Both the position numbers and the translations under genes were made by a program. DNA of 63,564 nucleotides, counting the filler, from Salisapilia sapeloensis CBS 127946 (Eukaryota; Protista; Oomycota), in the NCBI GenBank assembly GCA_023334545.1. It is 9 parts of 9 records of this genome, joined end to end, with 100 filler letters (N's around TTAATTAATTAA, not from the genome) between each part and the next. Parts side by side here need not be neighbours in the genome. Positions count along the whole stretch, not along the records: positions 20,936 to 28,861 come from JAADVB010000503.1; 8 more parts are not named here. One strand, written 5' to 3'. Below, piece by piece: positions 20,936 to 28,961 of the stretch (position 1 is its first letter; the number at the start of each line of letters is the position of its first letter). The notes under the pieces were generated by a model. It worked only from the letters and a program-made list of their open reading frames with translations. It made no database searches and was not told the origin of the DNA.

Positions 20936-22367
20936 ACAGATGCTGCACAAAGCCATCGATATGAAGAACATGCAGATCGCTACAACGCTGCTGGAGAGAG
21001 GTGTCAGTGTAAACGCGGTGGATGACCTCTCGTCGGATGGAACAGGAGAAACGCCACTTGAACGTGCCTGTCGACTAGGCCTCGCAGAATTCATCGTCTT
21101 ATTACTCGACCATAGTGCCGATACTGCACCAAAAAAGAACACTTCGCCTCTTCCTGTGCTGGTAATTTTAGTCAAGGCCGGTAATTCTGCAAGCTTAAGA
21201 AGGCTGATAAAACACAATCTCTCCCTGGATGTCATAGACGAACGGGGTCGGACAGCACTGCACTATGCGTGTGAGCTCGGGTTTTCAGATATTGCATTGA
21301 TCCTGTTGGATGCTGGGGCATCGCCAAATTTGGAAGACTATGCAGGAGAAACTCCACTATCTTTGGCCTTGAAAAGGAGTCAGATTGAAATCCAGACACT
21401 TTTAACAAATCATCCATTGGTCGATCAGAAAGACTTGAGGGAGATCCGACGTCCTTGCTGGTGGCTGGATGGAGAGCGTATAGCGATGGAAAAACAGCCA
21501 TTTGCGACAAACGGAAGCTTTGGAGCTGCTCATTTTGGTAAATGGAAAGGTATCGATGTTGTCGTAAAAGTTTTAAAGACCGATACGAATGACAACCGGG
21601 ATAAACTTGCCCACAGTTTCCACCACGAAATTCGAGTATGGAATGGACTTCAGCATGAGAATGTGATTCGACTGCATGGTTTCTGTGAGCTACCGGCAGG
21701 AAATACCTTCCTTTTTGTGTGCGAGAAGGCTGATAAAGGAGATTTGTCGAGATACCTCCAGGAGAGGAAGGAGATGCCCATGTCTTTACTTTGGAAATTA
21801 CTTAAGGAGACTGCTCAAGGCCTCAAGTTTCTGCATAACAGAAAAGTGGTGCATGGAGATCTAAAGTGCAACAATGTCCTCGTCAGCGGTGAGAAATGCA
21901 CAGCAAAAGTGGCAGACTTTGGTCTAGGCGCCACCCGGGGTGTTATTGAATCCCAGAACATTGCTTCTCATACTGGTGCGATACAGTGGGTCGCGCCAGA
22001 GTGTCTGAAAGGACATCCTACATCTTTTGAATCGGACGTGTACTCTCTCGGCATGTGTGTACTTGAGGCTAATAGTGGGAGAACGCCTTGGGGTTGGCTT
22101 AGTGGGCCTGCTGTCAAGAAGCATGTACTAGAAGGAAAACAGCCAGACAGAAGTGAACATGAAAGTGTTCCTGACGAGGTTTGGAATCTAGTTCAGCGCA
22201 TGTGTGCATTTAATCCAGCAGACAGACCAAAGCTTGATGAGGTAATTAGCACTTTGGCTGAATTGGAAGGTTCAGACAAAAGGATGTTATCTTCTCTTCA
22301 GCGTGATGAAGTGGACTGTGGCTTCTCTATCAGCTTGCGATTTACAGACCAAATAGTTGAATCCTAG
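20936..22367 (+). CDS. Ankyrin-repeat TKL protein kinase (non-RD), 5'-truncated by gap
   Basis: At least four ankyrin repeats (GETPLERAC, GRTALHYAC, GETPLSLA) precede a kinase with VVVK, HEI, HGDLKCNN, DFG and WVAPE. Confidence 0.92.
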
Positions 22368-23168: not shown

Positions 23169-25370
23169 CTATGACAAGTACCTAGAATCTCCCAAGGAAT
23201 CTTCAGTGTCTGACTGCTCATCTTCGTCCACGAGCACTCCGGAATCACCTTTTGCTTTCCAGGACACGCACAAAGAAATCGTACACTCTGAAATCGATGC
23301 TTGCTCTCTTTGCTTCTTCACCCATCGCTCCTCAAGCTCCAAAGGCAAGGAAAGCTTCTTTCCCTTTGCTTCTGTCAAATACTTTTCAGGAGTTATTTGC
23401 ACCGTCGCAAGCTTTTGATCGCTTGATCCACGATCATCGTAGACTTCCATACGGATAGTTCCGTGGTACTTGTTTTCGATCTTGAAATTAAATGTCTCGG
23501 CTGTATCCTTTCCGTCCCAACTTGGATTCGAAGTGATATGCTTCGAAACAGTGCTAACGTGCACGACGCCTTCCACTTCAACTCTTACGTAGGCACGTGC
23601 ACGGGGAAGGTTGGAGATACCAAGCAGCTTCACCTCCAAATCGAGTTTCTTCAGACTGGCATCGGAAATTGACGACTGACGATCAAATTGGGAGGAAAAT
23701 GAATGCCCTCCACTTGACGGTGTAAAGCTTCCGTTGGATCCCACAGACCCGAAGGAATTAAAGGGAAGGTTCTCACTTGAGTACATATCTTTCATCGACA
23801 CAATTGCGATTGTATGCTTCAACGCATTATCGCTTGGACTGTCGTTCGAAAAACGGTTAACAACGATCTCACCTTTTAGCTGCTTGTTCGCCAAGTTTGC
23901 GAGTTTCTTGATCACTTGTGGAAGCTCCAGTCGATGATTAGCATAGGGCTTACACATGCCTTCAATCAATTCCCACATTTCATCGATAACATTTGCTGGA
24001 CGCGATGGTAGCTTGTGCGTGAGGATGTTGTTGCATATCTCATCTTCACTCAAACCCTTCCAAGGAACCTCCTGAGCAATGACCTCGTAAAAGCACATAC
24101 CAAGGGCAAATATATCGGATTCTGGCGGAACTTTGCCAGTGACACCTTTCTCTGCTAAAAGCTCTGGGGCTTTCCAGCGCACGCTGTTCCAGGACGGCAG
24201 TCGGCTTACAGAAAGGGACTCCGTTCGTATGCGGCTGTATCCAAAATCCGAGATCTTGGCTGTCTCGTCGTCGCTTACGAGAATGTTGCTTGCCTTGAGA
24301 TCAGTGTGGACAAGACCGTTGCCATGGAGATGATTGAGTCCATTTGCAGCATCACGGAACAATTTAAACAGCATGCGCTCGTTTCCAGCTTTTCCAAAGT
24401 ACTGAGCAAAGTTACCGTTCGAAGCATACTCACAGACAAAGAAGAGAGGCTTTCCGACGTCGCAAATACCGAGCAACTTTAATACATTTTCATGATGATG
24501 AACTTTTCGCCATTTGTACGCCTCCTTTAGAAGCGAACGTTGCGTTGTTTTACCATCTTGAAGCAGTTGCTTGATTGCCACATATGAAGTTTCAGACTTC
24601 CACTTGGCTTTGTATACCATGCCATAGGATCCTTCACCAAGAAAACCACCACGAATTTCCGTCATTACGTCTTCTCGTGGGACGTACCAATCAGGTGGTG
24701 TACTCATTCTGTCCCTCCGGTCCGTTTCTTTTATCTCTCGTGCAACGAGCTTGAGCATGCTTTGCTCAGTATCTGAATGCTTCTTGAATCTGTACTTTTC
24801 TTCATACAGAAGGGTTCTCTGCGTGGACTCGTTGGAGGTCCTTACGTCGTCCAAAGCAGATCTTATTTTCTCAGTGTCGTCGAGTAATCTGTCTACCTTG
24901 AGCTCCTGCTCCTGCAATTTAGCTTGATACTTTGCCCCTGCAGCTCTCCATTCATGGTGAAAATTGCTTCTCACTCTCATATCGTCAAGATTAAGATCTT
25001 GAAATAGCAACTTTACTTCTTTCTTGTACATGGCAGTCGTATCATTCACTTTTCCGCGAAGAATGTACCGCATAATCTTCCCCTTTCCTGTGTACTCTAT
25101 TAAGAAATCATGGTAGTTGTAGACGATGTTGAAAAAGCGGTAGACGATTTTTTCGGACACAGCTCCCTGCTCAGTCAGCTCAAGTAGTGTTTGCGTAAGA
25201 TGCTGCAAATGGTCATTGACCTCCATACATTGTGCATGGCTTTCTTCCATCTCCTTGCAACATGTGTATATTCCCTCGAGCAAGTTGGCCACTCCTCGAA
25301 GTCCAGGAACTGCATCCTCCACGACATCAAGCAATTCACGCGCGATTAGGACGCCAATATCGGTCGACAT
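23169..25370 (-). CDS. MLKL-like N-terminal four-helix bundle + coiled coil + TKL kinase (non-RD) + C2 domain
   Basis: Intronless 733-aa ORF. The N-terminus IYTCCKEMEESHAQC...LTQTLLELTEQG...RF...IMRYI parallels the MLKL 4HB. The kinase has GEGSYG, VAIK, HTDLKASN, DFG and WKAPE. The C-terminal beta-rich segment (NPSW...FNF...MEVYD...DQKLATVQI) fits a C2 domain. Confidence 0.85.
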   Translation of the reverse strand: MSTDIGVLIARELLDVVEDAVPGLRGVANLLEGIYTCCKEMEESHAQCMEVNDHLQHLTQTLLELTEQGAVSEKIVYRFFNIVYNYHDFLIEYTGKGKIMRYILRGKVNDTTAMYKKEVKLLFQDLNLDDMRVRSNFHHEWRAAGAKYQAKLQEQELKVDRLLDDTEKIRSALDDVRTSNESTQRTLLYEEKYRFKKHSDTEQSMLKLVAREIKETDRRDRMSTPPDWYVPREDVMTEIRGGFLGEGSYGMVYKAKWKSETSYVAIKQLLQDGKTTQRSLLKEAYKWRKVHHHENVLKLLGICDVGKPLFFVCEYASNGNFAQYFGKAGNERMLFKLFRDAANGLNHLHGNGLVHTDLKASNILVSDDETAKISDFGYSRIRTESLSVSRLPSWNSVRWKAPELLAEKGVTGKVPPESDIFALGMCFYEVIAQEVPWKGLSEDEICNNILTHKLPSRPANVIDEMWELIEGMCKPYANHRLELPQVIKKLANLANKQLKGEIVVNRFSNDSPSDNALKHTIAIVSMKDMYSSENLPFNSFGSVGSNGSFTPSSGGHSFSSQFDRQSSISDASLKKLDLEVKLLGISNLPRARAYVRVEVEGVVHVSTVSKHITSNPSWDGKDTAETFNFKIENKYHGTIRMEVYDDRGSSDQKLATVQITPEKYLTEAKGKKLSLPLELEERWVKKQREQASISECTISLCVSWKAKGDSGVLVDEDEQSDTEDSLGDSRYLS

Positions 25371-27005
25371 CTTCTTCGTCAGGCGGATCTATTTATGCGC
25401 TTCTATTTGCCGATCCTAATCTGGGTACACTTTGCACGTAAAGCATATTGACTGGATAAAAAGACCTAGATGGGAAATGTAGAGTCTTTTATATGTCCGA
25501 AGATCATAATTGCAAAGAGAATGTAATGGACAATGTAAGCTAGATATTGCTAAGATTTTCTCTGCTTGGCATACCTAGCAGGAAGGGCTGTGACCGTCAA
25601 AGTTGGAATCTAACGCGAAGATGACGATGATGTGATGGAGCCAAGACAACCATATGATGAACGTTATCAGAAAGGACAATTAGACAAGATAGACGGATAA
25701 AGTACAAAGTATTAGTAAGATACTGGATGTGACTTGCTATTTCATTACTTTTTGTTAGGCAGCGCATCCTAAATATTCCAACAAGTGACATTTTGAATAG
25801 TATTGTGAATTCAGCAAAATCTTTCCAACGTGGGCTTAATTGAAATATAGCCAAAATATAGCTATTGAGCAACGATGATGATGATGAAAATGAGAAGTGA
25901 GGTACATCGACGTCGATAACGCTACGACGTCTTCAGTCCGTACCATCACGGTCTAGTAACGTGGCAGCCGATCTTCCGGTTGTTGCATTTTAAATGCCTA
26001 GCGTTCCTGCTTTCTTGGCAGGTTTTCGATGAACCTGTGAGCGGCTTCTTTGAGGTTGCAAAGAACTGATGTATGTGTGGTGATGTGCAAGCAAATTTGC
26101 GATGATAATCAATGCTGCCGTTACCAGCTGGTATACTGCCACCGATAGTTTTTCACTGTTACCCGTGATGGCGCCAGGAAAGTATATAAAGAATTACCTC
26201 GGACAGCACTAACCAGCAGCCCGAGGAGCTACCCCTGTATGTACCAGCATATATTTAGTTTGAGCCAGACGTATTCCCGGATATCCGGTGAAGAGTCGGC
26301 GTATGTACGACGATAGTTGGCGATAGGGTCAACGAGACTCAAGGCACCCGGATGTAGTACCCGATAGTGCTAAATTGCCATGTATCAGGTGGAGCCAGAA
26401 GTAATCGCCGGTGCCGGCTAACATCGATCACTACCAGTGAATTGCTGATTGTAACGGGCGCTCCGTCCGTTACTTTAGTAAGAGACTTTGTCTTCCTTTG
26501 CTTTTAGTACTTGTTTGGTACAGATGATTAGATGTGCAGCCTATTCCTCCATAGAATATGGAAGGTACATTTGATAGAAAGATGTGTAAGCTAGTGCAGG
26601 ATTTAAATGTACCAAATATAGCTAATTTTTAGGTTTCTCACGCTTTTCCTATCGCACATGTAAGCCACTCACAGGTAACAAGAGTCCCAATGCCATAGCT
26701 TGAGATGGAACCGTAAGGATCCTGCAGCGGCGGCTGCACACAGAGATCGATCGTGGACCCTATTCCGTGGAAGGCGAGATCGCGTGTCTATGGGCAATGG
26801 TTAACACCGTCACCGCTCTTTCCATCCCTATTTAAGAGGTGGACGCAACTCATCTGGATCTCAAAGAGAGCGTAATCGATCAATATACACTCCATTGAAA
26901 CAAAACAAATACGAGATGTTGGAAGTCGTTGCAGGATGTTTGAAGTTGTTGCCAATAGTTGCACAGTGTTCCTGAACGTTGCGAAGTGTTGCAACTGTCT
27001 CCAAT

Positions 27006-27357
27006 TGTAACGGGAAGTTACATGAATGTATCCCAAGCTGGGGTAACATTCCGGATCTTGAAGCGGGTCCTTGTAATGGAGCATGTGACGCAAATACAAA
27101 GGTACAAGGAACATGAATGGTCGTTAGACCTTTCCATACTAAGTTGAAGATTAAGGAGATTGTATTAGGATTTAGTAGGTATATAGAAACTCGAAGTCTA
27201 GTATTCGAATTAAGCCTCAATCCAATCAGTTCTCATTTTGCTTTCTAAAGCACAAGTGTCTTACACTACTTCCGTACTTTTTAAGTATCAGAGTTTCATA
27301 CTCCGCGTTTTACGCTTCTCTTACGTTTACAGGGCTATCATTGTGACTTCCGTTACA
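27006..27357 (-). mobile_element. Solo-type Gypsy LTR (352 bp)
   Basis: TG...CA ends with terminal inverted repeats TGTAACGG(G)AAG/CTTCCGTTACA. Closely similar to the LTR at 45690-45993, which adjoins gag/protease. Confidence 0.85.
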
Positions 27358-27958
27358 CGGTCCATGCCAGAAGTATTGAGACTACTATTGTGGGAACGAC
27401 TTGCATCGTGTCCCATGTAATGGTTGGTCCATTACATTATCTCACTAAAGTACAATCTACTATTTCCTTGGTTTCAATTGGTATCTTCATACAAATTGCT
27501 AAAGCATCCTTGCACGCAAAGTGTAAGCTAAAGTAATACAGCGGTAACTCTATTACATGACACGTGCGTTGTGAGGATGACGGTTTAAAACTAGAAGTGA
27601 GAATATATTGATACTTTAGACTGATCCTACTTTTGCACATCTTCCTAAATCTACCACCATGTGATATCTAGGAAGGATGCAAATCATCTAAACTTGTACC
27701 AACAAAGAACCAAAGTAAAATAAAGTAGCGCTAATCTGAAGTAAAGGTAGAAGCCCGTTGCACGTACTGTTGAGCAGCTGATGCACGTAGTGAGTAGAGT
27801 TTATTACAATATTTTCGTAGACGTAGACTTACCATTTCTGTTCGGTATAAATTTTTGTTTTTCCCTTTCGCAACACTAGCGGCAGGTCTTCGACACAAGG
27901 CGTTTATGAAGCTTGAAAACAGCTAGACTACAATACAATTAGACATTGTAAAAGTCGT

Positions 27959-28213
27959 TCAGTGTAAGTTATTACATGGTATCATACACTTATGATGTTC
28001 TTTGGTCGCGTCAGCTTTAGCTAGTTTCTTCTCTTGTTGTTTACGTGCCAGCTGCTTCTTACGTCGTTCCCGTGCCTGTATGATTAAGTCGTATCCATAG
28101 ACTCCAAGAAGTGTCGGTGCGAACGTGTCGATGGAAGTGCCGTCATTAGGTTGGCCATGCGTAGGAGAGGTTGGCGGTGTTATCGTCTCTGGCTCGGACG
28201 ACTCAGTGTTCAT
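27959..28213 (-). CDS. Possible small hypothetical protein (basic coiled-coil C-half), exon structure unclear
   Basis: ATG-initiated ORF with a P/T-rich then K/R/E helical composition; no family recognised. Confidence 0.3.
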   Translation of the reverse strand: MNTESSEPETITPPTSPTHGQPNDGTSIDTFAPTLLGVYGYDLIIQARERRKKQLARKQQEKKLAKADATKEHHKCMIPCNNLH

Positions 28214-28630
28214 CGCAAAGCTCTTCGTAAAGGGATCGCGGATACCGGCCGTGTGATGACCGTTGATTTAAACGCTCGAATCTAATTGTCTTGCTTTTCA
28301 GATAAGATTTGCTTCTGATTATGGAAACTTGAATTTCTTCCTTGAACTTGGGCATTTAAAGAAGGGATGCTTTGGTAGATGCAAATCTGATTTATTCAGA
28401 TTTGCTTTCAGTATGAGTTGCACTTCCTATATCTGCCTATATCTGCCTAGATCACTCATCATCATGCGCAAATACCATTTCCTCAACCACGTTTTATTTG
28501 CCGATAGAGCTAAATGCTAACTTTTGCACACTAGACTCTATAGGTTGCGAGTGAAACTTACGTATCTTCGGTTGAAGAAGTAATCAGATATCAGGTCAAA
28601 ATTTCTTCCATAAAAAATTAAGGGGAAATA

Positions 28631-28731
28631 AAAAAAATGATACATTTTCAAATTTAAATTAAAAAATGTTACACAATTCGAGAAACTAAGAAAAATGTTA
28701 CACAATTTCGAGCATAAATTAAAATGTTACA
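28631..28731. repeat. AT-rich degenerate direct repeats (AAAATGTTACA core, about 30-nt period)
   Basis: Copies start near 28631, 28661, 28691 and 28721; the two central copies share AAAAATGTTACACAATT(T)CGAG. Confidence 0.7.
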
Positions 28732-28961
28732 TCAGTTAAAAATACGAAATTATCAAGGAATTATCAACTATTTCTGGTAAAGTTTGGGGTCAATTAGCAG
28801 TATGCGATGAGTATCGTGTAGAGCCACTTGATCACCCAGATCTATCAGCGATTGTTAAGTCNNNNNNNNNNNNNNNNNNNNNNNNNNNNNNNNNNNNNNN
28901 NNNNNTTAATTAATTAANNNNNNNNNNNNNNNNNNNNNNNNNNNNNNNNNNNNNNNNNNNN

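What the first reader, a model, noticed from the sequence alone, without database searches (positions are those of the whole stretch)
23169..25370. MLKL-like 4HB fused to an active non-RD kinase and a C2 domain
Seen: IYTCCKEMEESHAQCMEVNDHLQHLTQTLLELTEQG...YRFFNIV...KIMRYI, followed by a coiled coil, a kinase with intact K, D and DFG, and a C2-like tail. Known: human MLKL 4HB (recalled as IHKRCEEMKYCKKQC...LIKPLEMLQDQG...RFKAAL...ICRFL) permeabilises membranes in necroptosis but carries a pseudokinase; non-RD kinases are enriched among innate-immune kinases; C2 domains bind phospholipids. Inference: a self-activating, membrane-targeted cell-death or allorecognition executor in an oomycete. The domain may already be flagged in databases, but I know of no functional description.
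Basis: partly seen in the sequence, partly recalled or inferred. Interest (0 to 1): 0.82.

Follow-up and report, generated by a model that had tools for sequence, protein, structure and literature searches.

The report
MLKL-like bundle, active kinase, C2
This intact oomycete-type gene joins a domain related to the membrane-breaking head of the animal cell-death protein MLKL to an apparently working kinase and a lipid-binding C2 domain; it belongs to a large oomycete family that databases flag but no paper I could find describes.

Summary
Window 23169-25370 (-) is one uninterrupted 733-aa ORF.

- **aa 24-125:** four-helix bundle.
- **aa 131-223:** helical brace.
- **aa 243-490:** TKL kinase with every catalytic residue and HTD in place of HRD (non-RD).
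- **aa 496-577:** Ser-rich linker.
- **aa 578-667:** C2 domain, above Pfam's threshold.

The query alone misses Pfam MLKL_N (14 bits against a cut-off of 27). A profile of 141 homologous N-domains finds only MLKL N-terminal domains at the top of the PDB (E 9e-6). Of those 141 domains, 44 hit MLKL_N individually. The AlphaFold model (pLDDT 87) matches MLKL helix for helix, and MLKL is the best natural Foldseek hit, though only weakly (TM 0.43-0.48, E about 0.3).

The bundle-brace-kinase cassette defines at least 427 protein clusters. Every named one is an oomycete protein. None has Arg in HxD, and about 30% have lost the catalytic Asp. C-terminal tails vary (ARM, PX, C2, TPR, lectin).

This copy is the most divergent member sampled. 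It has an acidic bundle and a C2 without loop-1 aspartates.

A role in cell death or at membranes is inferred, not shown. An active kinase fused to an MLKL bundle already has a plant precedent (Pm13). I rate it a new variant of a known kind, of moderate to high interest.

The parts
23169..25370 (-). Whole gene: single uninterrupted ORF of 733 aa (ATG to stop), no intron needed.
   Evidence: The N-terminus aligns from residue 1 with Globisporangium P0005.
25320..25367 (-). aa 2-17: extra N-terminal helix, low confidence, not part of the MLKL-like core.
   Evidence: AF2 pLDDT 52-69 for the first 20 residues.
24996..25301 (-). aa 24-125: MLKL_N-like four-helix bundle. Helices 24-40, 42-67, 73-94 and 105-125, plus a short 'top' helix at 98-103 (KIMRYI, aligned with MLKL NICRFL).
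   Evidence: Family profile against the PDB: top seven hits are all MLKL NTD, E 9.1e-6. Pfam MLKL_N hits 44/141 relatives, and the query itself at E 0.032. 8/10 nearest relatives hit, 3 above the cut-off. AF2 pLDDT 87. Foldseek's best natural hits are 2msv/6d74, prob 0.90-0.95, E 0.3-0.4.
24702..24980 (-). aa 131-223: brace of four helices (about 131-164, 166-177, 181-193, 200-223) linking bundle and kinase.
   Evidence: AF2. Family conservation runs through it (W137/W141, L187, E190). MLKL's brace start aligns to profile positions up to 144-158.
23901..24644 (-). aa 243-490: TKL-type protein kinase domain. All catalytic residues are present and it is non-RD (HTD). It is preceded by the family motif P-x-W-(F/Y)-(I/V)-P at aa 225-230.
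   Evidence: Pfam E 4e-45. PDB alignment. Motif census. Foldseek TMt 0.8-0.88 to Lck/FGFR/BRAF kinase domains.
23640..23885 (-). aa 496-577: Ser/Gly-rich low-complexity linker, probably disordered.
   Evidence: Read from the translation. No Pfam hit.
23370..23639 (-). aa 578-667: divergent C2 domain with a short loop 1 that has no acidic residues.
   Evidence: Pfam C2, 31.1-33 bits against a cut-off of 22, E 7e-8. Weak pairwise match to the PLC-gamma1 C2 with gaps in loop 1.
23172..23369 (-). aa 668-733: C-terminal tail ending in an acidic Asp/Glu/Ser stretch. No known domain.
   Evidence: Translation. No Pfam hit.
20940..22367 (+). Neighbouring gene, convergent, cut at its 5' end by the edge of the piece: ankyrin repeats plus a TKL kinase (HGD, also non-RD), 34% identical in the kinase domain to the finding's kinase.

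Best explanation
**What it is (shown, about 0.9).** This is an intact gene for a divergent member of a large family found so far only in oomycetes. Each member has a conserved cassette of about 480 aa: an MLKL_N-type four-helix bundle, a helical brace, and a TKL kinase that is never of the RD type. In this copy the kinase keeps every catalytic residue. The cassette is followed by a Ser-rich linker and a C2 domain whose loop 1 has no acidic residues, so a calcium-independent type is likely.

**How it most likely works (inferred, about 0.4-0.45).** It would be a single-chain, kinase-gated, membrane-acting switch of the MLKL kind.
1. At rest the bundle is packed against the brace and kinase. AF2 gives one confident rigid arrangement (pTM 0.86).
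2. The C2 brings the protein to a membrane. In sister proteins a PX domain may do the same job.
3. A change in the kinase's state, by nucleotide binding, auto-phosphorylation or trans-phosphorylation, frees the bundle and brace.
4. The freed bundle then oligomerises and disturbs the membrane.

By analogy with animal MLKL, plant MLKLs and fungal HeLo/HELL domains, the outcome would be regulated cell death or ion leakage in defence or self/non-self reactions.

Because the bundle here is acidic, membrane affinity probably comes from the C2 rather than from a basic bundle surface.
For: **Intact ORF and domain order:**

**Homology of the N-domain to MLKL_N**
- Family profile A2 gives MLKL NTDs of several different sequences as its top seven PDB hits (E 9.1e-6 to 3.4e-4), covering MLKL residues 14-153.
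- In the other direction, Pfam MLKL_N hits 44/141 family N-domains, best E 1.8e-8.
- It also hits 8/10 of the query's nearest relatives, three of them above the cut-off.
- The query is pairwise similar to those relatives at 38-54 bits.

**Structure**
- The AF2 model of aa 1-225 has pLDDT 87 and pTM 0.80, with helices that map one to one onto the MLKL sequence aligned.
- MLKL NTD structures are the best natural Foldseek hits, prob 0.90-0.95 and 22-25% identity.
- The model of aa 1-500 has pLDDT 88 and pTM 0.86.

**Kinase:** all catalytic motifs are present.

**Family context**
- 427 representative clusters at E<=1e-3.
- N-K is the dominant architecture, 67 of the hits analysed, with tandem N-K units as well.
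- Lipid-binding tails recur: PX in 5 and C2 in 2 of the 39 C-terminal tails scanned (38 relatives plus the query).

**Precedent:** Pm13 has an MLKL_NTD, a three-helix brace and a predicted active kinase, and all three parts are needed for resistance (PMC10951266).
Against: - No functional data exist for any member.
- The query itself fails Pfam's MLKL_N cut-off (14.2 bits against 27).
- The Foldseek E-values (0.3-1.4) and TM-scores (0.43-0.48) are weak, as is usual for small helical bundles.
- Helices alpha1-alpha2 carry a net charge of -6, in the lowest tenth of the family, with no run of basic residues like the one in the human MLKL sequence shown.
- The query replaces four of the most conserved family residues (R54H, H116K, D120K, W137F) and has the longest branch among 81 cassettes. 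The ancestral activity may therefore be altered or lost.
- Many relatives carry ARM, TPR, ankyrin or lectin domains, or several kinase units. That also fits ordinary signalling scaffolds.
- The C2 match is modest and its lipid specificity is unknown.

Confidence: 0.45

Rival explanations
1. It is an ordinary, non-lytic signalling kinase. The MLKL_N-like bundle and brace would be only an autoregulatory, dimerisation or docking module for an active TKL kinase. The C2 would place the kinase at a membrane so that it can phosphorylate substrates there, with no membrane damage.
For: - The kinase is catalytically complete.
- The family is very large, with many paralogues, tandem kinase units and typical protein-interaction tails such as ARM, TPR and ankyrin. 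This matches the oomycete-specific TKL subfamily OS1 described as carrying protein-interaction domains (PMC3019232).
- The bundle is acidic and lacks several family-conserved residues.
Against: - From what I know of the literature, every characterised bundle of this superfamily acts at membranes (animal MLKL, plant MLKLs, fungal HeLo/HELL, RPW8/CC-R). PMC10951266 says the same.
- About 30% of family cassettes have lost the catalytic Asp yet keep the bundle, so phosphotransfer cannot be the family's only output.
- PX and C2 tails recur.
Confidence: 0.38
2. It is a decaying or neofunctionalised paralogue. A fast-evolving duplicate would have lost the ancestral bundle function and now be evolving neutrally, or serve as a decoy or regulator of intact paralogues.
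For: - Longest terminal branch of 81 cassettes, 1.64 against a median of 0.50.
- Four highly conserved family residues are replaced.
- No close orthologue in about 15 billion proteins.
- TKL genes lie in clusters and duplicate often (PMC3019232), and the neighbouring gene is another TKL kinase (34% identical in the kinase domain).
Against: - The 2.2-kb ORF is intact, with all kinase catalytic residues, the glycine loop and a recognisable C2.
- AF2 folds it confidently.
- The long branch may simply mean the source lineage is missing from the databases.
Confidence: 0.12
3. The MLKL resemblance is a chance or compositional match between generic helical, coiled-coil-like sequences.
For: - The query alone scores only E 0.032 on Pfam MLKL_N.
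- Foldseek E-values are not significant, and designed helical repeat proteins are mixed among the hits.
Against: - The profile search returns MLKL from several different sequences as the top seven hits, with a gap of more than three orders of magnitude to the next protein.
- The Pfam matches in the other direction cover positions 3-132 of the 142-position model in many relatives.
- The conserved C-x2-M-x-E-x4-C-x2-V-x2-R-L and R-L motifs align with the corresponding MLKL residues.
- The domain order is the same as in MLKL.
Confidence: 0.04

Closest known systems
Animal MLKL (necroptosis effector; PDB 2MSV, 6ZVO, 4BTF)
   Same: - Same order of parts: N-terminal four-helix bundle with a short top helix, helical brace, C-terminal kinase-fold domain of the TKL group.
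- Profile-level sequence homology of bundle and brace (E 9e-6), and the best natural fold match.
   Different: - MLKL is known as a pseudokinase (PMC10951266), switched on by RIPK3 phosphorylation (abstracts listed). This protein keeps every catalytic residue.
- Its HxD motif has Thr instead of Arg.
- Its brace has four predicted helices; MLKL's brace is shorter (two helices, from my knowledge of the structures, not measured here).
- Its alpha1-alpha2 are acidic rather than basic.
- It adds a linker and a C2 domain.
- No RIPK3-like partner is known.
Plant MLKL-type kinase fusion protein Pm13 (Aegilops longissima/wheat) and Arabidopsis MLKL1-3
   Same: Pm13 has an MLKL_NTD (cd21037), a three-helix brace and a kinase predicted to be active. 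All three parts are required for function (PMC10951266). That is the same logic as the cassette here.
   Different: - Different kingdom, and no evidence of orthology.
- No C2 in Pm13.
- The Arabidopsis MLKLs have pseudokinase domains (PMC10951266).
- No member of the oomycete family has Arg in HxD.
- Pm13 is a disease-resistance gene; no role is known here.
Oomycete-specific TKL subfamily OS1 of the Phytophthora infestans kinome (Judelson and Ah-Fong 2010, PMC3019232)
   Same: OS1 members are soluble oomycete-only TKL kinases with ankyrin, Armadillo, PDZ or TPR accessory domains. The relatives found here, and the neighbouring gene, show the same repertoire.
   Different: - The 2010 study did not recognise the N-terminal bundle.
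- I did not compare PITG sequences, so the equivalence is probable, not shown.
- The paper's accessory-domain table lists C2 and PX only for AGC kinases, not for TKLs.
Fungal HeLo/HELL domains (HET-S, HELLP) and plant RPW8/CC-R domains
   Same: Helical-bundle domains regarded as relatives of the MLKL bundle, acting on membranes in cell death (as summarised in PMC10951266).
   Different: - No sequence match to these Pfam families among those reported for the query, or among the 25 families shown of 111 for the 141 family members.
- Those domains are attached to prion-forming or NLR modules, not to kinases.

Membership tests
MLKL_N domain family (Pfam PF22215 / CDD cd21037) | The protein itself scores above the curated Pfam cut-off (27 bits). 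| tested here: not met
   Query aa 29-74 only, 14.2 bits, E 0.032. Not listed at all in the full-length scan.
MLKL_N domain family (Pfam PF22215 / CDD cd21037) | Homology detectable at profile level or through intermediate sequences. | tested here: met
   Profile A2 against the PDB: top seven hits are MLKL NTD, best E 9.1e-6. 44/141 relatives hit MLKL_N, best 1.8e-8. 8/10 nearest relatives hit, three at 27.2-35.3 bits. Query against those relatives: 38-54 bits.
MLKL_N domain family (Pfam PF22215 / CDD cd21037) | Four-helix bundle with a short top helix, followed by a brace helix. | tested here: met
   AF2 pLDDT 87; helices 24-40, 42-67, 73-94, 98-103, 105-125, then 131-163. The same helices appear in the 500-aa model. 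This is a prediction, not a solved structure.
MLKL_N domain family (Pfam PF22215 / CDD cd21037) | Statistically significant structural match to solved MLKL bundles. | tested here: inconclusive
   MLKL NTDs are the best natural hits (prob 0.90-0.95, rmsd 4.5-4.8 A over about 118 columns), but E is 0.3-1.4 and target-normalised TM is 0.43-0.48.
MLKL_N domain family (Pfam PF22215 / CDD cd21037) | The isolated bundle binds and permeabilises membranes or kills cells. | not testable with these tools
   Needs expression and liposome assays.
Animal MLKL proper (necroptosis effector) | Domain order bundle, brace, kinase-fold domain. | tested here: met
Animal MLKL proper (necroptosis effector) | Catalytically dead pseudokinase domain. 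| tested here: not met
   GEGSYG, K267, E283, D357, N362, DFG 375-377 and APE are all present.
Animal MLKL proper (necroptosis effector) | Basic surface on bundle helices alpha1-alpha2. | tested here: not met
   Net charge of aa 24-67 is -6; family median is -1. The human sequence shown is rich in Lys and Arg there.
Animal MLKL proper (necroptosis effector) | Activation by an upstream RIPK3-type kinase. | not tested
   No partner was searched for, and only 7.9 kb of context is available.
Non-RD protein kinases | The residue before the catalytic Asp in HxD is not Arg, and the catalytic residues are intact. | tested here: met
   HTD at aa 355-357. Among 81 family cassettes: G 60, N 12, S 5, T 1, A 1, D 1, R 0.
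C2 domain (Pfam PF00168) | Score above the curated cut-off (22 bits). | tested here: met
   31.1 bits and 33 bits on the tail alone, covering profile positions 3-94 of 104.
C2 domain (Pfam PF00168) | Full set of calcium-binding aspartates in loops 1 and 3. | tested here: not met
   Read from the sequence: loop 1 is short (NLPRARAYVRV) with no acidic residue, and loop 3 keeps YDDRGSSD. Loop 1 is gapped against the PLC-gamma1 C2. No structure model of the C2 was made.
Oomycete TKL subfamily OS1 (PMC3019232) | Kinase domain groups with P. infestans OS1 members. | not tested
   Only the repertoire of accessory domains matches. No PITG sequence was placed in a tree.
HeLo / HELL / RPW8 domains | Match to their Pfam models. 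| tested here: not met
   None among the query's hits. None among the 25 families shown of 111 for the 141 relatives.

The most novel reading that the evidence does not exclude
Oomycetes would carry a large, diversifying arsenal of single-chain 'sensor, switch, executioner' proteins. An MLKL-type membrane-attacking bundle would be gated by its own non-RD kinase, or by a pseudokinase in about 30% of cassettes. Variable C-terminal modules (ARM, TPR, ankyrin, lectin, PX, C2) would target or trigger it.

This would be a necroptosis-like immunity or incompatibility system independent of RIPK3, in a lineage reported as not known to have innate immunity (PMC3019232). The C2-bearing copy would be a membrane-resident variant.
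Probability: 0.2. Interest if true: 0.85.

Novelty: new variant of a known kind. Interest (0 to 1): 0.6.

Why it matters
MLKL-type bundles carry out regulated cell death in animals, and related bundles act in plant and fungal immunity. How old this kinase-gated design is, and how widespread, remains open.

This work shows that the complete MLKL layout of bundle, brace and kinase fold exists in oomycetes as a family of several hundred sequence clusters. Most copies have active-looking kinases, and some have their own lipid-binding domains.

If these proteins act on membranes, necroptosis-like execution would reach the stramenopiles. It would also give a natural series of active-kinase and pseudokinase versions for asking what the kinase fold does in gating the bundle.

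Oomycetes include major crop and fish pathogens, so a built-in death or defence pathway would also matter for their biology. Nothing here has been tested functionally, and automated databases already flag the domain. The value lies in the lead and in the family-level picture, not in a demonstrated new mechanism.

Tried and rejected
- **Word-indexed homologue searches.** The search restricted to aa 1-225 found nothing. The same tool run with the 141-sequence profile A2 also found nothing. The exhaustive HMMER search found 427 clusters, so the two negatives reflect tool sensitivity and length filters, not absence.
- **Foldseek on the 500-aa model.** It returned only kinase-domain structures, so it could not test similarity to full-length MLKL.
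- **Pairwise PDB search with the C2 tail.** It gave only a weak PLC-gamma1 C2 match, E 0.14. The C2 of P0126, the only relative seen with a C2, is barely alignable with this one, so a shared origin of the two C2 fusions is not established.
- **Source organism.** Not identified. The closest relatives are 27-35% identical, and the best one comes from an unnamed Logan run, SRR15309551.
- **Literature.** Five searches for oomycete-encoded MLKL or HeLo proteins found only papers in which oomycetes appear as pathogens of plants.
- **Bacterial promoter/terminator scan.** Irrelevant for a eukaryotic locus.
- **Flanking 3.5 kb.** tRNA, tandem-repeat, dispersed-repeat and Pfam scans were all empty or trivial.
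- **Chance similarity between helical sequences.** Considered and rejected on the evidence.
Full report
**1. The observation**

It encodes 733 aa from an ATG.

Pfam places a protein kinase domain at aa 243-490 (PK_Tyr_Ser-Thr, E 4e-45) and a C2 domain at aa 578-667. The C2 scores 31.1 bits against a cut-off of 22, and 33 bits when the tail is scanned alone. Nothing at curated level is found for aa 1-225.

The catalytic residues can be read from the HMMER alignment to a Src/Abl ancestor kinase and from the sequence itself:
- glycine loop GEGSYG
- VAIK (K267)
- alphaC Glu283
- HTDLKASN (D357 and N362, with Thr356 where RD kinases have Arg)
- DFG 375-377
- APE 401-403
- R480

So 'intact K, D and DFG' and 'non-RD' are both correct.

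**2. Is the N-terminus MLKL-like?**

On its own the query gives only a sub-threshold Pfam MLKL_N match (aa 29-74, 14.2 bits, E 0.032). A word-indexed search with aa 1-225 found nothing.

Pairwise alignments showed that the similarity to oomycete TKL kinases runs through the whole N-terminal 220 residues, not just the kinase. This holds for Globisporangium P0005 and for Phytophthora P0008 and P0002.

A five-sequence profile of this region (A1) was searched exhaustively against 1.84 billion representatives. It found 427 clusters at E<=1e-3 and 188 at E<=1e-10. I aligned 141 N-domains (A2) and ran three tests.
- **Against the PDB.** The A2 profile returns MLKL N-terminal domains as its top seven hits, E 9.1e-6 to 3.4e-4. 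They cover MLKL residues 14-153, that is the bundle and the start of the brace. The next protein is at E 0.019.
- **In the other direction.** Pfam MLKL_N hits 44 of the 141 domains individually, best E 1.8e-8. It hits 8 of the 10 N-domains most similar to the query. Three of these are above the cut-off, with matches covering positions 3-132 of the 142-position model. The query is similar to these relatives at 38-54 bits.
- **Structure.** AlphaFold2 with A2 gives a confident model (pLDDT 87, pTM 0.80). Its helices are at 24-40, 42-67, 73-94, 98-103, 105-125 and 131-163, followed by three more. Through the alignment these map one to one onto the MLKL bundle helices, the short top helix (NICRFL in MLKL, KIMRYI here) and the brace.

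Foldseek against the PDB ranks MLKL NTD structures (2msv, 6d74, 6ux8, 6zz1, 6zvo) as the best natural hits, with probability up to 0.95 and 22-25% identity. The E-values (0.3-1.4) and TM-scores (0.43-0.48) are weak, and designed helical repeat proteins are interspersed.

My reading is that homology to MLKL_N is well supported by profiles and consistent with the fold. The structural test alone would not carry it.

**3. The family**

Local HMMER mapping of N-domains and kinase domains on the hits shows the N-K cassette as the basic unit. There are 67 N-K proteins and 38 N-only proteins, many of the latter fragments. Many proteins have tandem cassettes, up to N-K-N-K-N-K in the 2465-aa Lagenidium giganteum protein P0121. 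The query aligns over aa 8-500 at 27-30% identity with dozens of cassettes.

Every relative that carries a name comes from an oomycete: Phytophthora, Pythium, Globisporangium, Lagenidium, Aphanomyces or Saprolegnia. One Pythium oligandrum protein is already named 'Mixed lineage kinase domain-containing protein' in UniRef, so automated annotation flags the domain.

Among 81 aligned cassettes (A4), none has Arg in HxD (G 60, N 12, S 5, T 1, A 1, D 1). The catalytic Asp is kept in 57, the DFG Asp in 65 and the VAIK Lys in 69. Non-RD status is therefore a family trait, and about 30% of cassettes have lost the catalytic Asp and look like pseudokinases.

C-terminal tails are diverse:
- Armadillo/HEAT repeats in 13 of the 39 tails scanned
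- PX in 5
- C2 in 2 (this protein and P0126 from a Logan assembly)
- TPR, a ricin-type lectin and an AAA ATPase domain, one member each (a phosphatase-type domain also appeared once)

This repertoire, together with the ankyrin-kinase neighbour, matches the soluble oomycete-specific TKL subfamily OS1 of the P. infestans kinome (PMC3019232). That paper was written before an MLKL_N model existed. I did not test the equivalence with PITG sequences.

**4. This copy within the family**

In a FastTree of the 81 cassettes the query has the longest terminal branch, 1.64 against a median of 0.50. It has no close orthologue in the collections searched.

It replaces four of the most conserved bundle/brace residues:
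- R54 to H (Arg in 136 of 141)
- H116 to K
- D120 to K
- W137 to F

Its alpha1-alpha2 segment has a net charge of -6, against a family median of -1. The human MLKL sequence displayed is rich in Lys and Arg there.

The C2 is divergent. Pairwise it finds only the PLC-gamma1 C2 at E 0.14, with gaps in loop 1. Loop 1 has no acidic residue, so a canonical calcium-dependent C2 is unlikely. That conclusion comes from reading the sequence; I made no structural model of the C2.

A 500-aa AF2 model built with A4 is confident overall (pLDDT 88, pTM 0.86). This suggests a defined packing of bundle, brace and kinase. Foldseek on it returns only kinase domains such as Lck, FGFR and BRAF, with TMt 0.8-0.88. 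That confirms the kinase fold but says nothing about similarity to full-length MLKL.

**5. Mechanism**

What is shown is the architecture and the homology. The rest is inferred.

The most likely model is a kinase-gated, membrane-acting switch of the MLKL kind. The bundle would be held by the brace and kinase. The C2 (PX in sister proteins) would provide membrane recruitment, which the acidic bundle probably cannot provide itself. A change in kinase state would release the bundle, which would then oligomerise and disturb the membrane. I put this at about 0.4-0.45.

The main rival, at about 0.38, is a non-lytic signalling kinase that uses the bundle only for regulation or docking. The scaffold-type tails and the sheer number of paralogues favour it. 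Against it, a quarter to a third of cassettes are predicted to be catalytically dead yet keep the bundle, and lipid-binding tails recur.

A decaying or neofunctionalised paralogue (about 0.12) is suggested by the long branch and the lost conserved residues. The intact 2.2-kb ORF with all kinase motifs argues against it.

Chance similarity (about 0.04) is largely excluded.

**6. Comparison with what is known**

It works like MLKL in layout, but it is not MLKL proper. It has a complete catalytic site rather than a pseudokinase, no basic alpha1-alpha2 surface, a longer brace, and an added C2.

The closest published analogue is the plant kinase fusion protein Pm13. Pm13 has an MLKL_NTD, a three-helix brace and a kinase predicted to be active, and all three parts are required for resistance (PMC10951266).

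Five full-text searches found no paper on oomycete-encoded MLKL-like proteins.

**7. Verdict**

The structural interpretation is supported. The functional interpretation is plausible but untested, and somewhat weakened for this particular copy.

I class it as a new variant of a known kind: an MLKL-type kinase fusion in a new lineage, with a non-RD active kinase and a C2 added. Interest is 0.6. The family-level finding is of more interest than this single gene.

**8. Surroundings**

The neighbouring convergent gene (20940-22367, +) is cut by the edge of the piece. It encodes ankyrin repeats plus a TKL kinase with HGD, 34% identical in the kinase domain to the finding's kinase.

The 3.5 kb on the other side (25371-28861) has no ORF over 119 aa, no Pfam hit, no tRNA and no significant repeat.

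Noticed in passing
window 20940-22367 (+): The convergent neighbour encodes ankyrin repeats plus a non-RD (HGD) TKL kinase. Its 5' end is cut by the edge of the piece. It is 36-43% identical to the two kinase units of an ankyrin-kinase-kinase protein from a Logan assembly (P0001), and 34% identical in the kinase domain to the finding's kinase. Two TKL kinase genes therefore sit tail to tail about 800 bp apart.
   Followed up: partly
window 25371-28861: About 3.5 kb upstream of the gene has no ORF longer than 119 aa, no Pfam hit on the longest ORFs, no tRNA and no dispersed repeats. There are only two tiny tandem repeats (26915-26952 and 28662-28731). GC falls to 0.37-0.39 in places. Its nature is unknown: it could be intergenic, could hold intron-rich genes, or could be a decayed element.
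   Followed up: partly
window 24960-25211 (aa 54-137 of the ORF): The query differs from the family at four of its most conserved positions (R54 to H, H116 to K, D120 to K, W137 to F). It also has the longest terminal branch of 81 cassettes. I cannot say whether this reflects an unsampled lineage, fast evolution or loss of function.
   Followed up: partly
family alignment A4 (81 cassettes from P0002-P0268): No cassette has Arg in the HxD motif, and about 30% have lost the catalytic Asp. Active and dead kinase units occur side by side in tandem-cassette proteins, for example P. citrophthora P0002 (HGG, HGN and HAG units next to an HAD unit).
   Followed up: partly
L001:1015-3567 (Logan SRR15309551): P0126 is the query's best BLAST hit (30% identity over 522 aa). 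Its layout is bundle, kinase, second bundle, then a canonical C2 (77 bits). The next gene on that contig is another kinase, with a zinc ribbon. Its C2 is barely alignable with the query's C2, so the two C2 fusions may be independent.
   Followed up: partly
relatives P0161, P0125, P0131/P0136/P0266/P0005: Other cassette proteins end in a ricin-type lectin domain (Lagenidium P0161), an AAA ATPase domain (P. citrophthora P0125) or PX domains (four of those checked). A varied set of C-terminal modules is attached to the same cassette.
   Followed up: no
tools: The word-indexed homologue search found nothing for the N-domain, either as a single sequence or as a 141-sequence profile. The exhaustive HMMER search found 427 clusters. 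Negative results from the indexed tool for short, divergent helical domains should not be read as absence.
   Followed up: yes
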